From the NCBI GenBank assembly GCA_038087875.1, contig CM075986.1, forward strand, positions 15,872,001 to 15,936,000: 64,000 nucleotides of DNA, read 5' to 3'. Below are positions 7,579 through 58,300 of this stretch, in pieces (position 1 is the stretch's first letter; each line of letters starts with the position of its first letter). This stretch comes from Malacoraja senta (taxonomy: Eukaryota). Position numbers and translations under genes: made by a program. The notes under the pieces were generated by a model. It was given only the letters and a program-made list of their open reading frames with translations. It had not been told where the DNA came from and made no database searches.

Positions 7579-8898
7579 CCACGGCAGCATTGCTGGGGGA
7601 AGGAGCAGGTGGCTAGCAGCTAACCAAGCGGGAAGCACTGGCACCTCGCCTCTCTTTAACAAGGGGCACAGCAGCTGCGATTCGTTAATTTGCTTTAAAT
7701 AGCGTGTAATTTAGGGGCCATTGCTAACACGAGGGAAGGATTGCTGTTATTATTGTGGGTAGCGACATCATAAAAAAGGTCATGGGGAGGTAGTTACACA
7801 AACAACCAACGGATGTCTCGGTTTATAGCACCCATCCAGGAGTATCTAAACCTGTCCATGGACAACGGCAGGCCACTGGCCGAGGCATGCTCTGTTCATT
7901 GAAATCCCTGGTATTAACAATTATTCCATCTATTTAATAACGGAGGAAAATTGAAATGAAAGTAAAACTGGAACAGGGTCGCCAGAATTCCCCGGCCTGA
8001 TAACTTGTACATAACTGTAGTGCTACTTTAACCAGAGCAATTCTTCCCTCATTACACATTGCTATATCTTTGGATAGATAACCCACCCCAGTGGGAACAG
8101 TTTGCAACTGCACAGAATACTCTCAACGATATATCTCTTTAAAAAGGATGGTATGATGCAGCAGTCTGGTTATGCCAGATATTATAACTGTGCTTTATAG
8201 AAAAGACACAGTGCCAGTTACGCATCAGTTGTGACTGAATTATCTGCTACAGGATTCAGCAGAACCTTAAAAATCATAGTGCATCACCTGTACACCTTGC
8301 TACGTTGTACACTTCTCTCACTATCCAGAAGCCTACAACCCAACATAACTGTCCAGATCACTTCTCTGGAGCAGTTCCTTCTAGAGATAGAGCAGATCTG
8401 CAAGTGATTTCAACTTGGTGCCTTGAGCATTTTGTAGTCAGATATTTTAATCAGCAAATTGGACTGCAGTTCCACTGCAGACCCTTGCCTCATGCACCTC
8501 TCTTCTCACACACATACCCCCAACCTGTAGCTGTTTCAGAGAACATGCACCCCAGCTGTGAAGAGAGCCCTGTTACAGTGACCAGTTACCCTCCCCCATG
8601 AGTTATTGTCTACCTTGTCTCCCATCCTGGTGCTCTGCTAACCACTAGTTACCATGATGCAGGTCACTGCTGCTGCAAGTAAGAACTTAATTGTTCCGTT
8701 TCGGTACATATGACAATAGAACACTCTTGACTCTTGCTGCTCCATCTACCCACTGCATACTATGACTCGGCTCCGGAATGAAACATTTATCTCTATACAG
8801 AAAACAGACCTTCCCCATCACCACCCCCCACCCCCCTCCACTCTATCTCTACCACCCATTTCCATTTAATTGCTGGTTGAATAACCAAGGATTTTAAT

Positions 8899-8992
8899 CA
8901 GTCTGAAGAAGGGGTTTGACCTGAAACGTCCCCCATTCCTTCTCTCCAGAGATGCTGCCTGTCCCGCTGAGTTACTCCAGCATTTTATGTCT
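8899..8992 (+). mobile_element. Short Penelope-terminus insertion with hammerhead-like core; 15-bp flanking direct repeat
   Basis: accaaggattttaat at 8884-8898 and 8993-9007; CTGAAGA at 8903-8909, then GAAACGTC. Confidence 0.85.
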
Positions 8993-9305
8993 ACCAAGGA
9001 TTTTAATTGTCAGATTTAGTGATGGCTGTGTCATTTTCCCCAGCTTGGACTGTTTTTATAAAGCGAGCATGTGACTGAAGTGCGTGGGATTTCAGTTGTG
9101 TTAATTATCACAATGTGATATCACTGAATTTCAGGGGCATCCTGAATCACAGGCTCAGCAGATGGAATGCATTTTTTCAACTTAAACTGTGCTTCAGTAA
9201 TGAGTTACATATGAAGAATAATATTTTGGTACTTAAATGTTTACTGTTTGTGAGCCATTGCATTTTACATTACAGTTAATGAGTCATGGATCATTTCTGG
9301 GTTTC

Positions 9306-13445: not shown

Positions 13446-14420
13446 ATAGAGATACAAGAAACTGCAAATGCTGAAATTGGGTACAAAAAAACAAACTGTT
13501 GGAGGAACTCAGTGGGTCAAGCAATAACTGGAGGGAGAGGAACTGTTAACATTCCAGCTTGCGACTCTTCATCTGAGCTGAGAATGGAGAGGGAAGGTGG
13601 CCGGCGTAAAGAGAAGAGGTAGGTGAGACAGAACCCTTGGGTGATATGTGGACCAAGGGGAGGATGAGGAATGGAGGCAGGAAGGGTGGAGTTAGGAGGC
13701 AGAAACAGGTGGGTGATGGGTGGAACAGATGAGAGAAAAAAGAGAAAAGATGAGAGCGTCTCAAGAAGGGTCTCGCCCCGAAACGTCACCCATTCTTTCT
13801 CTCCAGAGATGCTGCAAGTTCCGCTGAGTTACTCCAGCATTTTGTGTCTACCTTTGAGAGAAAAAAAAGGCAGATTGAGCCAGGTGGGGGGAAGTGAAGG
13901 TGAAAACTGGATGGAGGATGTCAAGTAGGAGCACAAAGGCTGCCAGCGCTAGAATCATAAACAGAAGTGATGCTGGACACAATTTATGAGAGAGAGATGG
14001 ACAGATAAAAGCAGAGGGGGGGGGGGCATAGATCCAATGGGTGATTTTAGTGGATATGTAGGTGGATGGATCCAGGTGTGGAAAGGGTTAAAACAGAATG
14101 AAGGGGTGGCTGTATGGGAGGTCAAAGAATTCGGAGGAATCAGAAGAGAAGGGAAAGTAAGGGGTAAGGATTATCTTAAAGTGGGAAGTCCAATTATAAT
14201 ATTGAGTCATAAACCTCTCACACATAAAATTAGATGTTGTTCTTCTAGTTCACTTTTGGCCTCACCCTGGTAATGTAGAAGGCCAAGGACAGACAGTTTG
14301 GTGTGTATATGGGAAGGGGGGGTTAAATGGTATGCAACTGGAGCATGGTATGGCCATTGAAGAGCATAGGTGTTCTACAAACAGGTCGCCTGGTTTGCGC
14401 CTGGTCCCACCCAGCCCAGT
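13446..14420 (-). mobile_element. Older degenerate Penelope-like element 3' portion, with a younger terminus copy nested at about 13750-13853
   Basis: Similar to the GIY-YIG/3' UTR of 35280-35600; the nested copy is flanked by tgagagaaaaaa repeats. Confidence 0.6.
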
Positions 14421-15205: not shown

Positions 15206-15730
15206 TTCGGGTCGGGACCCTTCATCAGACTGAAATGTCTGACCCGAAACCTCACAATCCATGTTCTCCACACATGCTGCCCGACATGCTAAATTACTCC
15301 AGCACTTTAACGTCTACCCTCGTTGGTTCTTCGTGTTCTCGAAAAAATACATCTTATAGGGTCGCGACCCGAAACGTCGCCTGTCCCTTCGCTCCATAGA
15401 TGCTGCCTCACCCGCTGAGTTTCTCCAGCATTTTTGTCTACCTTCTTATATACTTTATCATTTACGAACTCTGGGAAGTTCAACAATATTCAATCCACTT
15501 CTTGTAGAACGACGGATGTTCTCCAGATTTGCTGCCTGATCTGCTGAGTTAGTCCAGCTTTTATGAAGGTGAATGGACACAAAAAGCTGGAGTAACTCAG
15601 CGGGACAGAGAAGGTCAGTCTGAAGAAGGGTCTCGACCCGAAACATCACCCATTCCTTCTCCCGCTGAGTTACTGCAGCATTTTGTGCCCATCTTCGGTG
15701 TAAACCAGCATCTGCAGATCCTTACTACAC
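15206..15730. mobile_element. Cluster of Penelope-terminus copies, some inverted
   Basis: Repeated gacccgaaac, gctgagttactccagc and gctggagtaactcagc motifs in both orientations. Confidence 0.75.
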
Positions 15731-25260: not shown

Positions 25261-26092
25261 TTCACAGTTGAGAAGGATGCAAAGAGGCAGGTTAAGAGAG
25301 TGATCGTACGCATGGTAGATACAATATAATGTGGTGTATATGTGAAGTAATAAAAGCCGAGATTTACTTAAGTCAATTGATTGTGAAGTGTTGATGTACA
25401 GATGATCTGTATGACTCTGTACACTTATCACTGCAAGCAAAAGTGTTGGTGTGGCAAACTGTTAAGATTCCAAATGAATTGTTGCCCTTCGTTGCACAAG
25501 GTTTTGATTATATAATGGCTAGAATGTTCTATAATAATTTACCGCACCTGCAGTATTAGTGTGCAATTTTGCCTCATGTATATTTGTCCGAGAGAAAGTG
25601 CAACAAAGGCTCACTATGCTGATTCCTCAAATGGCAAGACTGTCTTATGAGGAAGATTGGCTTGATTAGGTCTGTAGCTACTAGGGTTTAGAAGAATGAA
25701 AGATGATGTTATTGAATGTACACAAATTGGACACATGTCTTCCAGCAGGGAGGAGGATTTCCCTGGCTATGATGCCTGTAACCAGAGATGACAGTTCAAT
25801 ATATAGTTTTAAGATATTTAGAACCAAAGGTGATAAACCTGTGAAATTCTCAACCCCAGAAGGCTACAGAGACCGACCCACTGCGTTCATTTAAGAAGGT
25901 AGATGGAGTTCTAGTAAAGAGAGGGAGTAGGCATATGGTTTTGAAATAGAGAATCAACTGTGATTGGTGGCATGGACACGGAGTCAAACAACCTACACCT
26001 GTTATTTTTCTATCTTCTACACTCCCAGTTATCAAGTGTTTGAGTTTGCTCCATTGTTTCTGTCGCTAAATCCAACTTTACTGTTCAATTAT

Positions 26093-26303
26093 GTAGAAAG
26101 GTACTGCAGATGCAGTTTTAAACCGAAGATAGACTCAAAAAACTTGAGTAACTCAGCGAGACAGGCAGCATCTCTGGAGAGAAGGAATGGGTGACGTTTC
26201 GGGTCAGGCCCAGTCTGAAGAAGGGTCTCGACCCGAAATGTCACCCATTCCTTCTCTCCAGAAATGCTGCTTGTCCCGGAGTTACTCCAACTGTTTGTGT
26301 CTA
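26093..26303. mobile_element. Inverted (fold-back) pair of Penelope-terminus copies
   Basis: ggaatgggtgacgtttcgggtc...gacccgaaatgtcacccattcc, with arms of about 70 bp. Confidence 0.8.
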
Positions 26304-33000: not shown

Positions 33001-33330
33001 CTTCTGTGGAAATCGAGGCATTGGAGTGCTTTCTTGGCCAAGATTGCAAGCTACTTTTTAGTCTTCACCTCAATTACTTTTTTTTGCACGTGAGCACAGT
33101 GTGTAAATGTGAAATATATCAGGCTAATGCAAAATATATTGCCACTAAGGGCTCTATGTTTATATGGGGAAACCTAGAGAATAGTATATATAATTTATCA
33201 TATAGAGAACTGGGACTGTAACTTCAGAAAAGCAAAGGGATTCAAAAGGATAGTAGGTTTTGCTAACACTGCTAGCAATCAGTGGTAGAGCCCGTCTACC
33301 CAACCGAAGTGCAAACTAACCAAATTAGTG

Positions 33331-33517
33331 TATAGAAAGGAACTGCAGATGCTGGTTTAAACTGAAGATAGACACAAAAAGCTGGAGTAACTCAGCGGGC
33401 CAGGCAGCATCTCTGGAGAAAAGGAATGGGTGATGTCAGTCTGAAGAAGGGTCTCAACCCGAATCGTCGCCCATTCCTGCCTGTCCCGCTGAGTTATTCC
33501 AGCTTTTTGTGTCTATC
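33331..33517. mobile_element. Inverted pair of Penelope-terminus copies
   Basis: gatagacacaaaaagctgga...tccagctttttgtgtctatc arms surrounding a CTGAAGA core. Confidence 0.8.
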
Positions 33518-34349
33518 TCCAAATTAATGTATGCTGAGATTAATTGGATGTATAGTCTGGAACATTCAGGCTTGGTTTGTCCTCTGCGCAGGTCTGTACT
33601 TTTAACAGGTGAGGGTGATTTGCTTCGTACTACCATTCCTGATAGATAGTGACAAATGTGCAGTAAAGCAAGTCTTTTCTGAAAATGCCTCTGGGTCTGG
33701 TCAAATGTAGAAAAGTACAAGGGACTCGAGAGATTGCCAATGATGGAATTTTGAGCAAAAAACAAAAGGCTGGAGAAACTCTATAGGTTAGTCAGCATCT
33801 GTGGAGGCAGGTGGATAGTGAATGTTTCCCATCAATGCCCTGCATCAGAACTTGGGAAAAGTTGATGTTTCAGGTCCAGACCCTATCAGGGGTTGAGTTG
33901 GGTTTGGATTAGCAGGGGTTAGGTTTGTTTTACTTGTGGTTAGATTGGGAACACAATTAATTTAATTCCTAGGTAGCCCCCTAATCAGTGAATCAAAAAT
34001 GATTACATTTGGCTTACCATTTTGGCAGTCTCTGCTTTACTAGGCTAGAAATAGACACCTCTATATTTTAGACTTATCAAGAAAATGCTTGTTAATGGGC
34101 TCTTTTATCATTTCTCTCACCACTAATCTAGAAATACTTAAATTTAACAATCTAAAAAAATGTTTAGAGGGATTAATCTGAAATTGATTGAACTGTTTTA
34201 TTCCCCCATTAATAAAAGTGAAACATAACCTGCTGCATTCCTAGTTTAATGAATACCTTGTCTGCTCTCATAGTTGCCGTAGATGCCTGTTGAACAGCAG
34301 AAGTTCCACACCGACGTGAACTGAATTCTGGGCATTGTCTGCTTCAAAC

Positions 34350-34353: not shown

Positions 34354-34538
34354 GTAAGTGTTTGAGGTCCTTTCTTTGCAACTAACCTCTTTTCCTCGAA
34401 TTATTTTAACTCCTTGAGGTGTATTTGATTGGAAGCAGTCTAGTGTTTAAGCATAACTGCATGGCTTTATTAAAGAGGGAAGAATCTACAGTGCTTTTTG
34501 TATGTGTTAAATATCTGCTGTCACTTTGAACTTTTCAG

Positions 34539-34660
34539 ATGAACAGGAAGCTTTAAAGTCCATCATGAAGGACCTTGTGGCCCTGCAAATGGGCCGAAGG
34601 AGCCGTATGAGCGGCTATGACGGTGTGAAGAGCAAAGGCAGCATCCATGCCAATAAGCAG
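34539..34660 (+). CDS. MAP3K3: MAP3K3-type coding exon 2 ([41 protein letters not shown])
   Basis: ttttcag acceptor and gtgaga donor; 122 nt; matches the MEKK3 N-terminus MDEQEALNSIMNDLVALQM. Confidence 0.92.
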
Positions 34661-34768
34661 GTGAGAAAATCACTGGAATAGATTGATGTTAATTTTGAAA
34701 TGAAGTAATATGTTTGCATGACTGCAGGAAACCATGTTCTCATCAAAGTGCACTTCCTTTTATTGCAG

Positions 34769-34809
34769 AATGATGTTCGAATAAAGTTTGAACATAATGG
34801 CGAAAGAAG
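34769..34809 (+). CDS. MAP3K3: MAP3K3-type coding exon 3 (NDVRIKFEHNGERR), start of PB1 domain
   Basis: ttgcag acceptor and gtatgt donor; 41 nt; matches SDVRIKFEHNGERR. Confidence 0.92.
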
Positions 34810-34964
34810 GTATGTAATTTTGCAATATCAATAAATTAGGACACTGTATAATATTTTTATATAATCGTAAATGGGAGTCTGTCAAACACAGTTAATTCCT
34901 ACATGGTTAACTTTTTTTTAGGATTCATAAATTATATATATTTTTGGAGTTTGGCACATCTCAA

Positions 34965-37175: not shown

Positions 37176-37311
37176 CTTCTTCTTTCATGTGGCGTACACA
37201 GCCTAAAGTTGTTGGACAACTTGTTCTATTTGATCTTCCGTTTGTGCACGTCGAGTTGATTGCATTAGTCGAAACAGGGCGGACCACGTGAAGGTTGCAA
37301 TCTTCCACCCC
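37176..37311 (-). mobile_element. 136-bp SINE-like retroposon with (GAA)n tail and 12-bp TSD
   Basis: aaaacctgggtt at 37164-37175 and 37312-37323; the minus strand ends ...cgccacatgaaagaagaag. Confidence 0.85.
37258..37311 (-). ncRNA. HDV-like (CPEB3-type) self-cleaving ribozyme, minimal P4
   Basis: GGGGUGG-AA-GAUUGCA-ACC-UUCACGU-GGU-CCGCCCU-GU-UUCGA-CUAA-UGCAAUC: P1 7 bp with G1.U wobble, P2 7 bp, P3 3 bp, catalytic-position C at 37268. Confidence 0.82.
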
Positions 37312-47326: not shown

Positions 47327-47428
47327 GTACAGTCTGAAGAAGGGTCTTGACCCGAAACGCCACCCATTTCTTCTCCCCAGAGATGCTGCCTGTCCTGCTG
47401 AGTTACTCCAGCTTTTTGTGTCTATCTT
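47327..47428 (+). mobile_element. Short Penelope-terminus insertion, 16-bp TSD
   Basis: ctgttgtaattcttaa at 47311-47326 and 47429-47444. Confidence 0.88.
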
Positions 47429-47575
47429 CTGTTGTAATTCTTAATAGTTTGATCAATTGATACCACCAATTTTTTTTAGTGTATGTTATGTAAAGTTTCT
47501 TCATGACTCATGGCTCACTTTTACGCGATTGCATATATCTATTCTGATTGGATTTGGTTCTCTGCCCTCTTCCAG

Positions 47576-51055: not shown

Positions 51056-51170
51056 ACAACACCTTCTGCTGTTACGAAACAGGTCCGCATAAAGGCCTCT
51101 CAGTCTGTCGGGGACATTCTCAACACAATCTACCAGCCGCCAGAGTCACGAGGCCGACATCTCTCTGTCG
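51056..51170 (+). CDS. MAP3K3: MAP3K3-type coding exon 6 ([38 protein letters not shown])
   Basis: cttttag acceptor and gtgagt donor; matches [30 protein letters not shown] when read from phase 0. Confidence 0.9.
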
Positions 51171-53289
51171 GTGAGTATTTAGGTATAGAGTCGTAGAGCT
51201 ATACAGCATAGAAACAGACCCTTCAACCTCACTCGTCCAGCAGATCAAGTTGCTTAACTGAGCTGGTCCCACTTGCCTGTGACAATCCCATATCCCTTTA
51301 TGCATGTACCTATCAAAGTGTCTTTTAGCTGTCATAATTGTACCAATCTGTGCCACTTGCCCTTAAAGCCCATATTTACACCACTCTCTGTATGATAATT
51401 TGCCCTTGGGTCCCTTTTAAATCTTTCCCCACGGTTCTTAAAACCAATGCCCTCTAATTTTAGATTCCCCTACTCAGCGGAAAAGACGGGTGGCGTTATC
51501 TTGGCCCTCGTGATTTTATACACCTCTTTAAGGTCGCTCCTACGCTTCAGGGGAAAAAGTCCTCTCGCTATCCAACCTCTCCTAACACAACACTCGAATA
51601 CTGACATCCTCATAAATCTTTGATGTGCCCTTTCCAGTTCAATCATACCTTACCTACAGGAGGGAGACCAGAAATGTGCACAGTACAGGTGGAATCCCTT
51701 TTTTTTCTTCTCTGCCATCTCTGTTCCAGAGCCTTTCTGGATTATCTGTTTTTCCGGGCCAACAGAGGTGACATGATAATGAAACAACAATACACCCAGG
51801 CTCGCTAATGACACCTCTCCCGTGTCTCTAAAGCACCATGGAGTGCCAGGAACTTACAAAAAAAAAACAAATATAGAATGTAAACTGAACGTAAATGAAA
51901 TGATCTGCTCGGCCGTTTAAAGTCCCGACTTCTGACCCACTTTCCGATGCATACCACTCTTGCAAATGACCCCTTGCATTTTTTATCTCTCCTAAATTTC
52001 CCAATTAAAAAAAAAATATTGAAAGAGAAACTACATTTGTTTTCTCAATGCCTCAAATTCAAGAATGCAAGATCCTAGCTTGTTGCTTTCTATCATCAGC
52101 CAATGAGCGGTAACTCCCCAACTGCTCTGCAGCGGTCCCACTGGCAAACCAGGAGTTCTTTCCTTTTTGCAAAATGGATCCCCACTTGTATTTCAATTCT
52201 GGGCTGGAATCGAGTCAATCAAGCTAGTATAGTTTGATTTTATTTTCTGTCAATATGTCAGATGGTATGGCTGCTCCTGGCACAGGGATAGACAATAGGT
52301 AGTGTGGTATATGATGCATGCACATTCTCACCTTGAGGGATCTTGCAATGCACCTTGCCAGATCTAAAAGAGGAATGTGCAAAGTATATCAAACCAGTAA
52401 ATACTACAGCATCACCTATTTGATACTGTTTTGTTATCTCTAGACTTCAGTAGCTGAATATTTAAGCATCTTCCTAATAGTATCTGGTGCTTTTGCTAGA
52501 TTAATCCTTGCTGATGATTTTTTTTTAAATTCCCACTAAGTGTCATGTTATGAATGTTATGCTTGTTTTACAGTGAGGGTTGGAAGAGATCTCAGAAGGC
52601 CTGTGATGCAGCAGTAGCATATTACTCAGCTGTGGTGTTTATCTGTGAACATGATATGAGTTTAGCTGCATTTGTATTTGTGGGAGAGATAAAGATCGAG
52701 CAGGATGAAAATGGTCCAGAGCTCAATGCCTCTTGTTTTTCCATCCACTTCCTTTGATATACATGGCTTTGCGAGACTTCCCCTTTCCTGTTAGCGAGAT
52801 GTTGTTTCCACAATAATATTTGGAGGGCTGGCCAATCAGATAAGGACTGCTTTTAGTATTGTGTGAAGGAGTGTTTGAGATGTGTTGGAAAAAGTGCAAG
52901 TTGTGGGGACGTAGTAATGCATTTGAGCCAAATGTTACATTATCTTGTTGGTTTGTTTCATTTGGAAGAGAATGAGAACGTTGAAATAAATATTTTGTAT
53001 TCCTGCACTGCCAGGAACCTCATGGAGTGCTGTTTCATTAGTCTAACTCTCCAGCTAGGAGATGACATTGTGAAACTTTTTAATGGCCACTTTTCCAAAT
53101 CACAGAAAAGAAAACTTTGATTTCAAAGTTCACACCAAGCATTTGGTGTATGAAGACTGCAGTGAAGAAAAAGATGACTCTATAAACCTCATTTGTCAAA
53201 TATTCCAGGCTACTCATTCTGGCCCTTGTGATTCATGGGTAAATGGTGTAATTAATTCTTAACTGTCTTCATTGTTAACAAATCATTGC

Positions 53290-54140
53290 CACTACCCCTT
53301 GTAACTGCATTTATCGCTTCACCTCTTCCCTTCCCATGATTCAGGGACCCAAACAGAATTATCTGTGAGGCGGTGATTTATTTGTACTTCAAAATCTCGT
53401 TTACTGCATTCTTTCTTTTAAAATCTTTTTATTTGTTTTTCCCCCCAAAAAACAAAAACAAAACAAAGACAGAGCAAAAAGAGTAATGATAAACATAACA
53501 ATGATATTGATACATAGGGATCAGGATTACATTAGTAACAGGTATAACCTAATATGAGTCCAGTGTCAAAATACACATTGAATATAGACCTCTATGTAAA
53601 TATAGTTAAATATTTAAAAGAAAACTTATATATGTAGAAAAAAAACACAAAGATAAAAAGACAAAAAAAGAGGAAAAAAGTGAAAAACAAAACAGAATCT
53701 GAACTGAGAATTTCAACAATTTGTCTGTTTGTCGTCAAGTCCGTTCCACCATATAGAGGTAAAATAGTTTTATAACGGTTAGAGAGGGAGCAATTTATGT
53801 TGTGTGAAAGTGTTGAATAAATATTCCCCAAGTCTTTTCAAATTTAACCAAGGGTTCAACAATGTCATTTACTGCATTCTGAGCTCACAATGTAGTCTCC
53901 TCTAATTGAGGGCAACCAAGTCCAGATTGAGTGATCACTTTGTGGGACACCTGCATTCAGTCCATAGGGGTGACCTTGACCTTCCCATTCCATGCCACTT
54001 TAATTTCCCATCCCACTCTGATCTATCGTGCTGTGGCCTCCTGCTCTCGGTGACACCCAACACAAGCTTATAGCACCTCATTTGTCTGGGCACATTTCAG
54101 CCTTCTGGACTCGATAATAAATTCTACAACTTTCAGATAA
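53290..54140 (+). mobile_element. Old Penelope GIY-YIG fragment interrupted by an L1 insertion
   Basis: Colinear similarity with the reverse complement of 35390-35770 (attcagggaccc, gccactttaat, cacctcatt). Confidence 0.6.
53413..53867 (-). mobile_element. 5'-truncated L1-type LINE (ORF2 C-terminus, 3' UTR, A-rich tail), 13-bp TSD
   Basis: tttactgcattct at 53400-53412 and 53868-53880; minus-strand peptide DIVEPLVKFEKTWGIFIQHFHTT*; T-rich UTR and AATAAA. Confidence 0.75.
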
Positions 54141-54602
54141 CTTCATTTCTCAGCCAGTATGTCATCCATCTGTAATATTGGCTTTTTTTTCCTCTGCAGT
54201 CGAGGCAAAGAGAAAATTGGAAACCAAAATCATACAATAAGCAGTTTAAAAATTGCTTATAGCTTCCACTGTGAAATCACACAAGAGGCACATTTAGATG
54301 CTAATTTGCATTATTCATTGAGAGGCTTGCAAAACACCAGCCCAGAAAAAGGATCTTGCAATATTTGTCTTTTCTCAAGTGAATAGGGTATAAAATGTCA
54401 AATTACCCTCAGATAACTTTCTGGATGCATTGACGATCCAGGAGAGATGTGTCAAACTCGACCCTTTATTGCACCGATCCTGCACAGTTACTTAAAACAT
54501 ATGCAAACTGAGCCTATTTTATTAGGCTTGACACAAAACTGGGGGGGGGGGGGGGGGGACAGATACAAAAACACATTAGCACAACAACAAAATTATACAA
54601 GA

Positions 54603-54689
54603 AGATAGATATAAAAATACTGGAGTAACTCAGCGGGTCAGCAGCATATTTGGAGAAAAAGAATAGGTGACGTTTGGGGTCGGAACCCG
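54603..54689 (-). mobile_element. Short Penelope-terminus insertion, 11-bp TSD
   Basis: attatacaaga at 54592-54602 and 54690-54700. Confidence 0.8.
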
Positions 54690-55061
54690 ATTATACAAGA
54701 TCTCTCATGATCATTTTAGATTGATTGTATGCCATCTTGCTCTATTAGATGTCTAGTTATTAGATAGCGATATAAATAGCTCTCACTCAACCACTTGACT
54801 GCATTAAACCCTTTGTTTATCCCCATCATGATTTTAGACTCCGGAGTGAGGGGCAGTGGCATGCCTTCATATTCCAAGTCAAGCCCCTTGGTCAATTTTG
54901 ATTGCACTCCCACTATTATTCTACAATACACTTCCGCTATTATACACCTGCTGTACCTGCACATCAACACCCAAGTCCTTCTGAACAACAATGCTGCAAT
55001 CTGGCCAATTAATAAATACGCTGCATGCTGACTTGTTTTACTCAGTTAGGTGTTTCTCTAT

Positions 55062-55198
55062 GTGTAGGAAAGAACTGCAGATGCTGGTTTAAATCGAAGG
55101 TAGACATAAAATGCTGGAGTAACTCAGTGCGACAGGCAGCATCTCTGGAGAGAAGGAATGGGTGTCGTTTCGGGTCAAGACCCTTCTTCAGACTGATC
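55062..55198 (-). mobile_element. Short Penelope-terminus insertion in the exon 7 polypyrimidine tract, 14-bp TSD
   Basis: aggtgtttctctat at 55048-55061 and 55199-55212. Confidence 0.9.
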
Positions 55199-55217
55199 AG
55201 GTGTTTCTCTATTGCAG

Positions 55218-55351
55218 GTTCTCAGAACACTGGTCGAAGCTCTCCGCCCCCAGGGTATGTTCCAGAACGGCAACAGCGGATAGCTCGCCAAGGGTCCTAC
55301 ACCAGCATTCACAGTGAGGGGGAGTTCATTCCTGAGAACATGGAACAGTGT
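55218..55351 (+). CDS. MAP3K3: MAP3K3-type coding exon 7 ([45 protein letters not shown])
   Basis: attgcag acceptor and gtgagt donor; 134 nt; near-identical to MEKK3 [40 protein letters not shown]. Confidence 0.93.
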
Positions 55352-58300
55352 GTGAGTAAAGATTTTGGCCAATAATGTGCACTGACATACAAGAAACAAA
55401 AGTCATGATTTCTTACAAATATTTTACCCCTTTGAGGATATTCATTACATCAGTGATTCCCAATCATTTAAATATATGGCCAACATGTTCACGCATTGTA
55501 AAATATGAATACCTTTTTGTTTACCCCGAAACAGTTTTTTTTTTAAATTCTGCTTGTCAATTCCAAAGTAGCTTTTAAGTTGTTCTGTATTTCCTGATGG
55601 AAATAATAATTTCATAGCGAATTTAACCCTGTAACACAGTGTTCCTAATTCATCAGTCGCGTTAGAGCCAATTTGCATTATGGAAATACACATTACAACA
55701 GCACTGCCTCTACCTCCTATATTCATATCCACACCATCAATGTATATGACAGTCATTAATGTATTTCAGTGTATTTATAGCAGACAGAGTCTCGCTCTTC
55801 AGCTCCTTGTATTCTGACTTAAGCTCCCGTGTTAAGGTCACAAAATTGAAGTGTGTCTGCAGTTGGAATTGCATTAGAATTACATGCTTCAAAACCTGCT
55901 TGTGCAGATCAACCTCACTCTACAGGAGGTCTGACCGGATACATCCTCTCAATTCAGCACTTGACCAGCCACGTTTTGGGCTTGCATTCGATAAAGGAAA
56001 ATTTTATTAAAAATTCTATCTTGTATTGATGCTTAATTTCTCTTCCAGTGCTATTCCCAAAAGGGCAAGAAATTTATAGCACGTATCAACGAGATAGCTA
56101 AAAGCATCGTGCAGAGAAGGAATTGCCAATGTTAAGAAAACCTAAACAATAGCTGGAACGTTGGAAATCTGACTCCCATGTGATGCGTCAAAAGCATCTG
56201 AGCAATGTCGACAGTTCTTTATTGACAAGATCTGACATCTCAGAGTTTTGTCAGAAATATTGCAAATGAGCCCCTTCCTAATGATTTCTCGGTGTGTGGT
56301 GGATCACTCAGCCAGCCTCATCAACCTTGTAAAGTCCTTATTATTTTTGCCTAAACTTCAATCCTTTGATACAGTTTATGATTCTGCAATTCACTTAAAA
56401 CACTGCCAAAAGAACAACTAATTGATCAACATGCTTGCTGAAATGAGGTCCTGATGTGCCAGTCTCAAGCAACTGAAAATTAACTAACTTTCTAAAAGAC
56501 AATAATTAAACATTTTCATGATTTTTATTTTTGCTCAGTTATTGCCATTAGTCCCAGTAATTGCTTTGTGGTTACTTATGTGGTGCAAATTAATGTCAAT
56601 ATTTACATGTACAGCAAGCAGACACCATGATGTTAGTACTTCATGCATTTCCATTGGCCAGTTACTGACAGTTTTACAATATCCTGGTTGCAGCCACTTT
56701 ATCCAGTAATTGTTCAATTTACAAATGTTCTATTTGCTCTTTTGCAGCAACGCTATTTTTGCTATAAAAATAGTGTGACTTTTTGACACGCACAATCTAT
56801 TAGAATGCGCTGTATTGAAATACCCAATCTTTAAAATGTTTTAAATAATTATGAAAGGTTTTCCAGGAACCCCTCTCTTTCGTAAATTGAGGAATGACTA
56901 TAGAGATTAGCAGCACTATTTGCCCTTTAAAAGGCAGGAAGGAAGTGTCCTCCAAGGCCCGTGAGGTTAAAGTGCAGCTTCTGCTGCTTCCCAAATAGGA
57001 GCTGGGAGTGTGACTAACTTGTTTTCATTGTGAGTGAATCATCCCAGGTGGGCCTCTGATTTCTGGCTCAATCTGCCTCTTGGCATCAAATTAATATCGG
57101 CTACAGTCTTAAAAGTGGAAACAAAATGGTATAGTTGGGAAGGGGAGACATCGAGAAAAAAGTGTAGCTGAATGTGAACAATTTGAGAATTCCACATGTA
57201 GCTGAGTAATTTCTGAATGGATGCTTGTTATGAGTCAATAGGTTTTATATAGACTCTGGAAGTCAGAGCCATACAGTTGGAAACAAGCCTTTCGGCCCAA
57301 TTTGTTCATACCAACCTAGATGTCCCATCCAAGCTTGTACTGTTGGGCAAATATGCCTCTAAAACTTTCTTATCCTTGTACAAGGCAAAATGTATTTTAA
57401 ATGTTGCAATTGTAGCTGCCTCAATAACTTTCTCTAGCAGCTTGTTCCATATACCCACTGCCCTCTGTGTGGGAAAATGTAGTCCCTTGAGTTCCTATTA
57501 CTTACCCTCTCACCTCTTAAATCTATGCCTTCTAATTCTTCATTTCCCCTTCTCTGGGGAGCAAGATTCAGATCATTTACCCTGGAAAAATTACACTGCA
57601 TTCACCCTATCTATTCCCCATTTAATTTAATACACCTGTTTAAAGTCACCTCTCAAAGTGTGCAACACAACAAACATCTATAAATGGCTGTGTCTTCATA
57701 ATTATTGAATCAATGACAACGGCAAGTCACTTATTCTACCATATTCAGCTCTTCCTGTTTATCCTTGTGCAATTGCTGTGAATAGTATTGAAGCTCACGT
57801 TGACTCTGAACATGTAGACTTGTTCCCACTCATGACTCTATCGTTTGTCTCCTTGCCACCATAAACTGGCTGCCTGTTATCTAAATACCTCTCTGTGCCC
57901 ACGGGTTTACTGGAAAGGCTGCAATTTATCTCTCTGATGTGAAGGCACCTACAGTTCCACAGTTCTGATGTTTTGCTGTTGTACTTTCTTATCCAAGTAG
58001 CCTTCCACAGCTTTCACTTCCTGTAACATTCTTCTACACAGAACGCGGACAGACAAGCTATCTGCTTGCGGGCCTCTGCTTGTACTGTAGATAGTGGGAC
58101 TCTGCCAGAACCGACCTCACTGACTCACCATCTGCTCTTTACCTCACTGAGAGTATATATACTTCATTCTTTCTGCATAATTTATTTACTCTGTCTGTGC
58201 TTGAAGGAAAAACTCATGTCATTTGCCATTTTAAAAGAAATCTGAACTCGCATTAGCACAGGACTTCTCATGACTTTGTGGTGCCCCAAACCACATCAGA

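What the first reader, a model, noticed from the sequence alone, without database searches (positions are those of the whole stretch)
55025..55217. Retroelement insertion duplicated the MAP3K3 exon 7 acceptor and created an in-frame 50-aa alternative extension
Seen: the TSD aggtgtttctctat is the polypyrimidine tract itself (55048-55061 and 55199-55212). The upstream copy is now followed by gtgtag (AG at 55066-55067) and keeps the likely original branch point (tgctgac, about 55026-55032). An exon starting at 55068 is exactly 150 nt longer than the normal one (55218), has the same phase, and contains no stop ([50 protein letters not shown]). The native acceptor has lost its nearby branch point and may use gactgat (55191-55197) supplied by the element. 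Inference: either an exonisation in progress or an element-donated branch point.
Basis: partly seen in the sequence, partly recalled or inferred. Interest (0 to 1): 0.7.

Follow-up and report, generated by a model that had tools for sequence, protein, structure and literature searches.

The report
Old SINE beside MAP3K3 splice acceptor
A short jumping element landed five bases before a MAP3K3 exon in an ancestor of skates and copied part of the splice signal, but the gene's messages still use the original splice site, so this is a tolerated old insertion and not a new protein segment in the making.

Summary
The sequence observation is correct. A full-length 137-nt member of a very abundant short retroposon family (55062-55198) is flanked by a perfect 14-nt target-site duplication (55048-61 and 55199-212). 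That duplication is the polypyrimidine tract of the MAP3K3 acceptor at 55218. The element's own 5' end (GTGTAG) puts an AG behind the upstream copy. An exon starting at 55068 would be 150 nt longer, in phase and without a stop.

"Exonisation in progress" is not supported.
- The insertion is old. It is present with both duplication copies in Amblyraja radiata, Leucoraja erinacea and a third relative.
- In Amblyraja and Leucoraja the extension carries an in-frame TGA.
- The element varies about as much as the surrounding intron.
- RNA-derived contigs from Leucoraja and from a closer relative join 51170 directly to 55218.
- All listed elasmobranch MAP3K3 proteins have the normal junction.

Minor use of 55068 in the window's own species could not be tested.

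The element-donated branch point is plausible but unproven. CTGAT (A at 55196, 22 nt before the exon) is the only yUnAy motif in the 177 nt before the native acceptor. This is a known kind of event and of modest interest.

The parts
51056..51170 (+). Upstream MAP3K3 coding exon; last base G, donor gtgagt at 51171
   Evidence: the RNA contig X2 record 1 covers 51062-51169
55027..55032 (+).
55036..55041 (+). TTTAC branch-like motif (A at 55040), my preferred candidate for the pre-insertion branch point. It would lie 27 nt before the pre-insertion exon start and lies 28 nt before 55068.
   Evidence: invariant in three species; its role is inferred
55048..55061 (+). Target-site duplication, upstream copy (copy of the polypyrimidine tract)
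   Evidence: invariant in Amblyraja and Leucoraja
55062..55198 (+). Full-length 137-nt member of an abundant short interspersed retroposon family, in sense orientation to the gene
55062..55067 (+). Element 5' end GTGTAG, which supplies the AG of the look-alike acceptor (AG at 55066-67)
   Evidence: the family 5' ends align as (G)TGTAG
55068..55217 (+). Potential 150-nt in-phase exon extension. It is open in the window's species and broken by an in-frame TGA in Amblyraja and Leucoraja. No use was seen.
   Evidence: native junction only
55192..55197 (+). Element 3' terminal CTGAT (A at 55196), candidate new branch point 22 nt before the native exon start
   Evidence: only yUnAy motif between 55041 and 55217; position matches the neighbouring acceptors; conserved; function inferred
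55199..55212 (+). Target-site duplication, downstream copy; this is the working polypyrimidine tract of the native acceptor
55218..55352 (+). MAP3K3 coding exon ([20 protein letters not shown]...), native acceptor AG at 55216-17, donor gtgagt at 55353
   Evidence: RNA contig joined to the upstream exon

Best explanation
An ancestor of today's skates acquired a full-length copy of a short non-autonomous retroposon. It integrated by target-primed reverse transcription into the polypyrimidine tract of a constitutive MAP3K3 exon, five bases before the acceptor AG. The staggered cut duplicated 14 nt of that tract, so positions -19 to -1 of the native acceptor stayed exactly as before. Only the branch point was pushed 151 nt away, behind 15 new AG dinucleotides. 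The native acceptor is still the one used. The most likely reason is that the element's last bases (CTGAT, A at 55196) sit where a branch point should be and took over that role. The old branch region, the upstream tract copy and the element's TGTAG form a look-alike acceptor at 55068. This is at most a weak cryptic or decoy site. That it is in phase and free of stops in this species follows from the insertion geometry and from the unmutated element sequence, not from selection.

Shown: the insertion, the duplication, its age, native-site use in relatives, and loss of the open frame in relatives.
Inferred: branch-point take-over, and low use of 55068 in the window's own species.
For: Insertion and duplication
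- Perfect 14-nt duplication flanking a repeat whose ends equal the family's ends.
- Four other copies in the window have exact flanking repeats of 10-16 nt of their own: 47330-47429 with 16 nt, 13758-13857 with 12, 54601-54681 with 11, 8897-9006 with 10.

Age
- Element, both duplication copies, GTGTAG and CTGATC are present and identical in Amblyraja radiata (L001) and Leucoraja erinacea (L002).
- They also appear in contigs of coded organisms B and C.

No sign of selection on the extension
- 8 of 137 element columns vary, against 9.6% and 8.0% in the flanking introns and 9 of 135 in the exon itself.
- Both relatives have an in-frame TGA in the extension.
- The same reading frame stays open in other copies of the family seen as short predicted ORFs.

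Use of the native acceptor
- X2 record 1, a 1605-nt RNA contig, places 51062-51169 directly against 55217-55351.
- The Leucoraja Logan contig L003 encodes the full 626-aa protein and reads CTGTCG followed by GTTCTCC.
- All ten elasmobranch MAP3K3 proteins examined read ...HLSV[G/S]SQNTGR.

Branch point
- CTGAT is the only yUnAy motif in the 177 nt before the native AG.
- It lies at -22, while the three neighbouring acceptors have theirs at -22 to -29 with an AG-free gap.
Against: - No lariat or branch-point data exist for this site, and many vertebrate branch points do not fit yUnAy.
- RNA evidence comes from assembled contigs of relatives, and contigs drop rare isoforms.
- The only raw-read RNA run (X29) had essentially no depth on the two exons. 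A few percent use of 55068 in the window's species is therefore not excluded.
- On paper the upstream site is a good acceptor: a consensus branch motif, 14 nt of the original tract, and TAG|G.
- No outgroup with an empty site could be fetched, because the gene ranges were over 100 kb.
- Only 15 of the 30 cluster members were listed.
Confidence: 0.6

Rival explanations
1. Real alternative 3' splice site. The site at 55068 is used at a meaningful or regulated level. In the window's species it would add 50 residues to the linker between the PB1 and kinase domains. In Amblyraja and Leucoraja it would give a stop-containing, decay-prone isoform (unproductive splicing).
For: - The upstream site keeps consensus branch motifs (CTGAC at -37, TTTAC at -28), 14 nt of the original tract and TAG|G.
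- GTGTAG and the upstream duplication copy are invariant in three species.
- The extension is in phase and open in the window.
- Contig data cannot see minor isoforms.
Against: - Only the native junction is seen in RNA contigs of two relatives.
- No annotated or clustered isoform about 50 aa longer was found.
- No protein in 1.84 billion representatives joins element peptide to the exon.
- The open frame is lost in two genera.
- Conservation of the region is not above the intron background.
Confidence: 0.15
2. The native acceptor does not use the element's CTGAT. It uses a non-consensus branch adenosine elsewhere in the element's 3' half, or still uses the old distant branch point. The element would then be a passive passenger.
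For: - Non-consensus branch points are common in vertebrates (general knowledge).
- CTGATC being invariant is not significant at this low divergence.
Against: - Fifteen AGs lie between the old motifs and the native AG. By the first-AG-after-branch rule, the old branch point would select 55066-67.
- CTGAT is the only yUnAy motif in range and sits at the distance typical for this gene.
Confidence: 0.2
3. The 14-nt repeat is a chance match or an assembly artefact, and no insertion took place at this spot.
For: None found.
Against: - Only two direct-repeat families of 10 nt or more occur in the 601 nt searched, and this one brackets exactly a full-length family member.
- The same structure stands in two independent genome assemblies and in contigs of two further runs.
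Confidence: 0.01

Closest known systems
Canine merle SINE insertion at the PMEL (SILV) intron 10 / exon 11 boundary
   Same: A SINE landed at a splice acceptor and is flanked by a 15-bp target-site duplication that contains acceptor sequence. The result is a choice between the original acceptor and a cryptic acceptor supplied by the element, governed by the distance from the branch point (PMC7349775).
   Different: - The merle SINE is antisense. Its poly(T) acts as the tract, and its length switches splicing and causes a phenotype.
- Here the element is in sense orientation and has no poly(A). The insertion is old, shared by the three skate genera compared and silent.
- Here the cryptic site lies upstream and uses the host's old branch region, and the element may give the new branch point.
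Exonisation of SINEs (Alu, MIR) and TE-supplied splice signals, including predicted TE-derived branch points (BLOC1S2 MIR/AluSp case)
   Same: Transposable-element sequence supplies an AG acceptor and a predicted branch sequence (PMC6822395; PMC2330237 and PMC2766253 listed).
   Different: - Those cases have transcripts that contain the element. Here none was found.
- The would-be product is an extension of a conserved constitutive exon, not a new cassette exon.
- The pyrimidine tract comes from the target-site duplication, not from the element.
Intronic 3' splice-site decoys bound by U2AF
   Same: An intronic tract plus AG that resembles an acceptor and lies upstream of the real one (PMC5932609, abstract).
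   Different: No binding data exist here. The idea is a lead from the abstract only, and I did not read the paper's body.
Short interspersed retroposons of cartilaginous fishes
   Same: Short, non-coding and extremely abundant, with flanking repeats of 10-16 nt around five copies in the window and two sharply defined 5' ends.
   Different: - I could not name the family. A full-text search for a diagnostic 15-mer found no paper.
- Rfam and ARAGORN find no tRNA, 5S or 7SL head.
- It has no poly(A) tail.
- It is unrelated to the ribozyme-headed 136-nt element at 37176-37311.

Membership tests
SINE / non-autonomous non-LTR retroposon | Short, non-coding, interspersed, high copy number | tested here: met
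   137 nt. There are 27 hits in 64 kb and 21-22 hits in each 73-kb orthologous locus. Summed contig depth on the element is several hundred thousand times that of single-copy flanks (this is not a copy number).
SINE / non-autonomous non-LTR retroposon | Copies flanked by target-site duplications of variable sequence | tested here: met
   Exact flanking repeats of 14 nt (this copy), 16, 12, 11 and 10 nt at four other copies (also seen in alignment A1).
SINE / non-autonomous non-LTR retroposon | Internal Pol III promoter, or a head derived from tRNA, 5S or 7SL RNA | tested here: inconclusive
   ARAGORN finds no tRNA. Rfam finds nothing at E up to 1. By eye there are A-box-like (TAACTCAG..G) and B-box-like (GGGTCGAGACC in the consensus) motifs about 54 nt apart; this is a lead only.
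SINE / non-autonomous non-LTR retroposon | 3' tail shared with a partner LINE, or a poly(A) tail | not tested
   There is no poly(A); copies end at CAGACTGA. No Pfam family, so no reverse transcriptase, was found in the six ORFs of 150 aa or more that were scanned, out of ten in the window. The partner was not identified.
Exonised transposable element / alternative 3' splice site | Spliced transcripts that use the element-derived acceptor | tested here: not met
   RNA contigs of organism A and of Leucoraja join 51170 to 55218 only. No longer isoform was found among the listed proteins. Depth in the window's own species is lacking, so rare use is not excluded.
Exonised transposable element / alternative 3' splice site | Reading frame kept open among species that share the element, if it is coding | tested here: not met
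   In-frame TGA in Amblyraja and Leucoraja.
TE-donated branch point | The branch adenosine used by the host exon lies inside the element | not testable with these tools
   Motif and distance evidence only. Lariat reads are needed.
MAP3K3 (MEKK3) gene | PB1 domain exons followed by this linker exon, with orthology to named MAP3K3 | tested here: met
   The exon is 44 of 45 residues identical to Hemitrygon MAP3K3. The cluster members are named MAP3K3 by NCBI. The coding exons for MAP3K3 residues 2-213, which include the PB1-domain part, map in order in the window.

The most novel reading that the evidence does not exclude
The insertion rewired the 3' end of this intron for good. The functional branch point of a conserved constitutive MAP3K3 exon has been transposon-derived (the element's terminal CTGAT) in all the skates compared. 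The orphaned ancestral branch region, the duplicated tract and the element's AG survive as a regulated upstream acceptor. That acceptor would yield a +50-aa kinase isoform in this species and a decay-targeted isoform in Amblyraja and Leucoraja.
Probability: 0.1. Interest if true: 0.5.

Novelty: new member of a known kind. Interest (0 to 1): 0.25.

Why it matters
This is a clean natural example of why some retroposon insertions right at a splice acceptor are harmless. The target-site duplication rebuilds the pyrimidine tract next to the AG, and the element's end happens to carry a branch-point consensus at the right distance. If lariat mapping confirmed A55196, it would be a documented case of a transposon-derived branch point serving a constitutive exon of a conserved kinase gene over a long evolutionary time. 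It also cautions against reading an in-phase, stop-free extension as incipient exonisation. Here the open frame is simply what the element had on arrival, and two sister lineages have since lost it.

Tried and rejected
- Raw-read RNA run X29 (organism H) gave about zero depth on both exons, so there are no junction counts. Read laying allows one call, so no second attempt was possible.
- Table 5 lists only 15 of 759 joints. The native junction is seen through the contig pieces (table 8), and absence of a 55068 joint among the hidden rows cannot be asserted.
- Protein searches for an isoform containing the extension:
  - The 116-aa read-through ORF against the 90% clusters returned only genomic ORFs of other vertebrates matching the exon part.
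  - A 58-aa query gave the same.
  - A search with the exon 6-7 region of full-length Amblyraja MAP3K3 found no separate longer skate cluster.
  - HMMER against 1.84 billion representatives gave exon-only hits plus 12 short ORFs made of other copies of the element, none joining both.
- Outgroup empty site: the Hemitrygon, Mobula, Scyliorhinus and Narcine gene ranges exceed 100 kb, so no DNA was returned. The Rhinoraja X2 and Pristis X2 products are not on record.
- Family identity:
  - Rfam found no hit and ARAGORN none.
  - The RNA fold is not better than shuffles, z = -0.87.
  - There is no similarity to the ribozyme-headed element at 37176-37311.
  - A literature search for a diagnostic 15-mer found 0 papers, and a keyword search gave no family name.
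  - No Pfam family matched any of the six large ORFs scanned.
- Splice-site strength scores such as MaxEnt and branch-point predictors were not available offline. I gave only qualitative comparisons and did not invent numbers.

Full report
**1. What is in the sequence**

Reading 54700-55500 and a repeat search confirm a perfect 14-nt direct repeat, AGGTGTTTCTCTAT, at 55048-55061 and 55199-55212. It brackets 137 nt (55062-55198).

- The downstream copy occupies positions -19 to -6 of the acceptor ttgcag|GT at 55216-17, with the exon starting at 55218.
- The upstream copy is followed by gtgtag|G, with AG at 55066-67.
- The upstream exon ends G|gtgagt at 51170.
- The interval 55068-55217 is exactly 150 nt. 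Of its three frames only the one set by the phase-1 intron is open.

**2. The insert is a retroposon, and the repeat is its target-site duplication**

- Two 18-mers from the insert occur 16 and 11 times in the window against 0 expected. BLAST finds 27 copies or fragments on both strands.
- Alignments (A1, A3) show a common 3' end...CTTCTTCAGACTGA, without poly(A).
- There are two sharp 5' ends. A long form begins (G)TGTAG.AAGGAACTGCAGATGCTGG, as this copy does. A short form begins about 33-36 nt further in.
- Laying contigs of four public runs on the stretch shows hundreds of contigs losing similarity at 55059-61 and raw RNA reads losing it behind 55196. These are exactly the ends of the insert.
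- Four other copies carry their own exact flanking repeats of 10-16 nt.
- The element is therefore a full-length member of a very abundant, short, non-coding retroposon family that inserts with 10-16-nt duplications.
- The AG at 55066-67 belongs to the family's conserved 5' end. It is not a mutation of this copy.
- I could not name the family or find its head. Rfam, ARAGORN, folding, comparison with the ribozyme-headed element at 37176-37311 and two literature searches gave nothing. Box-A-like and box-B-like motifs seen by eye are only a lead.

**3. The gene**

- The exon is 44 of 45 residues identical to Hemitrygon akajei MAP3K3.
- That protein's 90% cluster holds proteins named MAP3K3 by NCBI from many sharks, rays and skates.
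- The coding exons for MAP3K3 residues 2-213, which include the PB1-domain part, map in order at about 34.5, 43.5, 47.6, 51.1 and 55.2 kb.
- All ten elasmobranch proteins examined read ...RGRHLSV[G/S]SQNTGR across this junction, which is 51170 joined to 55218.
- The window's peptide is skate-like but differs from the three annotated skates, so it comes from another skate species.
- The exon number 7 was not verified.

**4. Age of the insertion**

- The look-up of encoding contigs returned the whole gene of Amblyraja radiata (L001) and of Leucoraja erinacea (L002).
- Window 54700-55500 aligns end to end with both, at 95.5% and 92.8% identity and without a 151-nt gap.
- In alignment A4 the element, both 14-nt copies, GTGTAG and CTGATC are present and identical in all three species.
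- Contigs of coded organisms B and C agree. B is essentially identical to the window. C is about 4.5% diverged. In B, a contig covering 54709-55080 crosses the 5' junction. In C, one contig covering 55172-55446 runs from the element's end through the duplication into the exon, and another covering 54623-55071 reaches 10 nt into the 5' end.
- The insertion therefore predates the split of these skate genera. It is not recent, and in the three genomes and two runs examined it was present every time.
- No outgroup with an empty site could be fetched.

**5. Is the extension under selection or in use?**

- In a three-species alignment of 54163-56600, 8 of 137 element columns vary. This compares with 9.6% of columns in the intron upstream, 8.0% in the next intron and 9 of 135 in the exon itself. 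The element is not distinguishable from neutral intron.
- Amblyraja and Leucoraja share changes (GCTGGAG to GTTGAAG) that put a TGA in the extension's frame. The window keeps the family-consensus state.
- Short predicted ORFs made of other copies of the family keep the same frame open. Openness is therefore a property the element brought with it.
- RNA evidence:
  - A 1605-nt contig of run X2 (organism A) places 51062-51169 directly against 55217-55351. Its exons differ from the window's at 3 of 243 positions, closer than Amblyraja or Leucoraja. By descent it should therefore carry the insertion.
  - A Logan contig from Leucoraja (L003) encodes the complete 626-aa protein and reads ...CTGTCG|GTTCTCC.... 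Seven such contigs are on record.
  - No protein cluster or listed isoform about 50 aa longer exists.
  - No protein among 1.84 billion representatives joins element peptide to the exon.
- Limits:
  - Contigs drop rare isoforms.
  - The only raw-read RNA run had no depth on these exons.
  - Minor use of 55068 in the window's own species therefore remains untested.

**6. The branch point**

- Between 55041 and 55217 the only yUnAy motif is CTGAT, with its A at 55196. It is made of the element's last bases and lies 22 nt before the exon. The single intervening AG is 3 nt after it, too close to be chosen.
- The three neighbouring acceptors of the gene each have one such motif at -22 to -29, followed by an AG-free gap.
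- The old motifs (CTGAC with A55031, TTTAC with A55040) are now 177-186 nt away, behind 15 AGs. By the established rule that the first suitable AG after the branch is used, they would select 55066-67 and not 55216-17.
- Since the native AG is the one used, a branch inside the element is the most economical explanation. This is inference.
- Of the two old motifs I prefer TTTAC as the pre-insertion branch point. In the window two AGs lie 13 and 17 nt after CTGAC.

**7. Comparison with known cases, and verdict**

- The closest case is the canine merle SINE at the PMEL acceptor. It has a 15-bp duplication holding acceptor sequence and a choice between the original and an element-derived cryptic site that depends on branch-point distance (PMC7349775).
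- TE-supplied acceptors and predicted TE-derived branch sequences are also described (PMC6822395).
- The case here differs in several ways. The element is in sense orientation and has no poly(A). The tract of the look-alike site comes from the duplication. The insertion is ancient and silent.
- Verdict: a real feature and a new member of a known kind, of modest interest. The one point worth an experiment is whether A55196 is the working branch point.

Noticed in passing
window 26092-26303; 33330-33527; 15576-15730: Copies of the same family lie as tail-to-tail inverted pairs, with a plus copy abutting a minus copy at their 3' ends. This could be nested insertion into the 3' end of an older copy or a palindromic derivative.
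   Followed up: no
window 55062 versus about 55094-55097, and the other copies: The family has two sharply defined 5' ends: a long form of 137 nt and a short form of about 102 nt starting AAGGTAGACA. This suggests two source genes or transcription starts, not random 5' truncation.
   Followed up: partly
window 53364-53979: Another very high-copy repeat in the same intron. It is strongly represented in poly(A) RNA raw reads of run X29, with depth up to about 940 and mostly one orientation, and A-rich loose ends at 53684.
   Followed up: no
window 55043-55044: The window has CA where Amblyraja and Leucoraja have TG. This creates an extra CAG between the old branch motifs and the upstream duplication copy. 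The old CTGAC motif reads CTGAT in the other two species.
   Followed up: partly
   Followed up: no
window 34538-34828: The N-terminal MAP3K3 residues 2-60 align over 291 nt with a gap. This suggests two small exons separated by a very short intron, or an optional segment.
   Followed up: no
L001 15345-21536 versus window 51171-55217 versus L002 17229-21058: The same intron is about 6.2 kb in Amblyraja, 4.0 kb in the window and 3.8 kb in Leucoraja, so lineage-specific insertions or deletions occurred further upstream in it.
   Followed up: no
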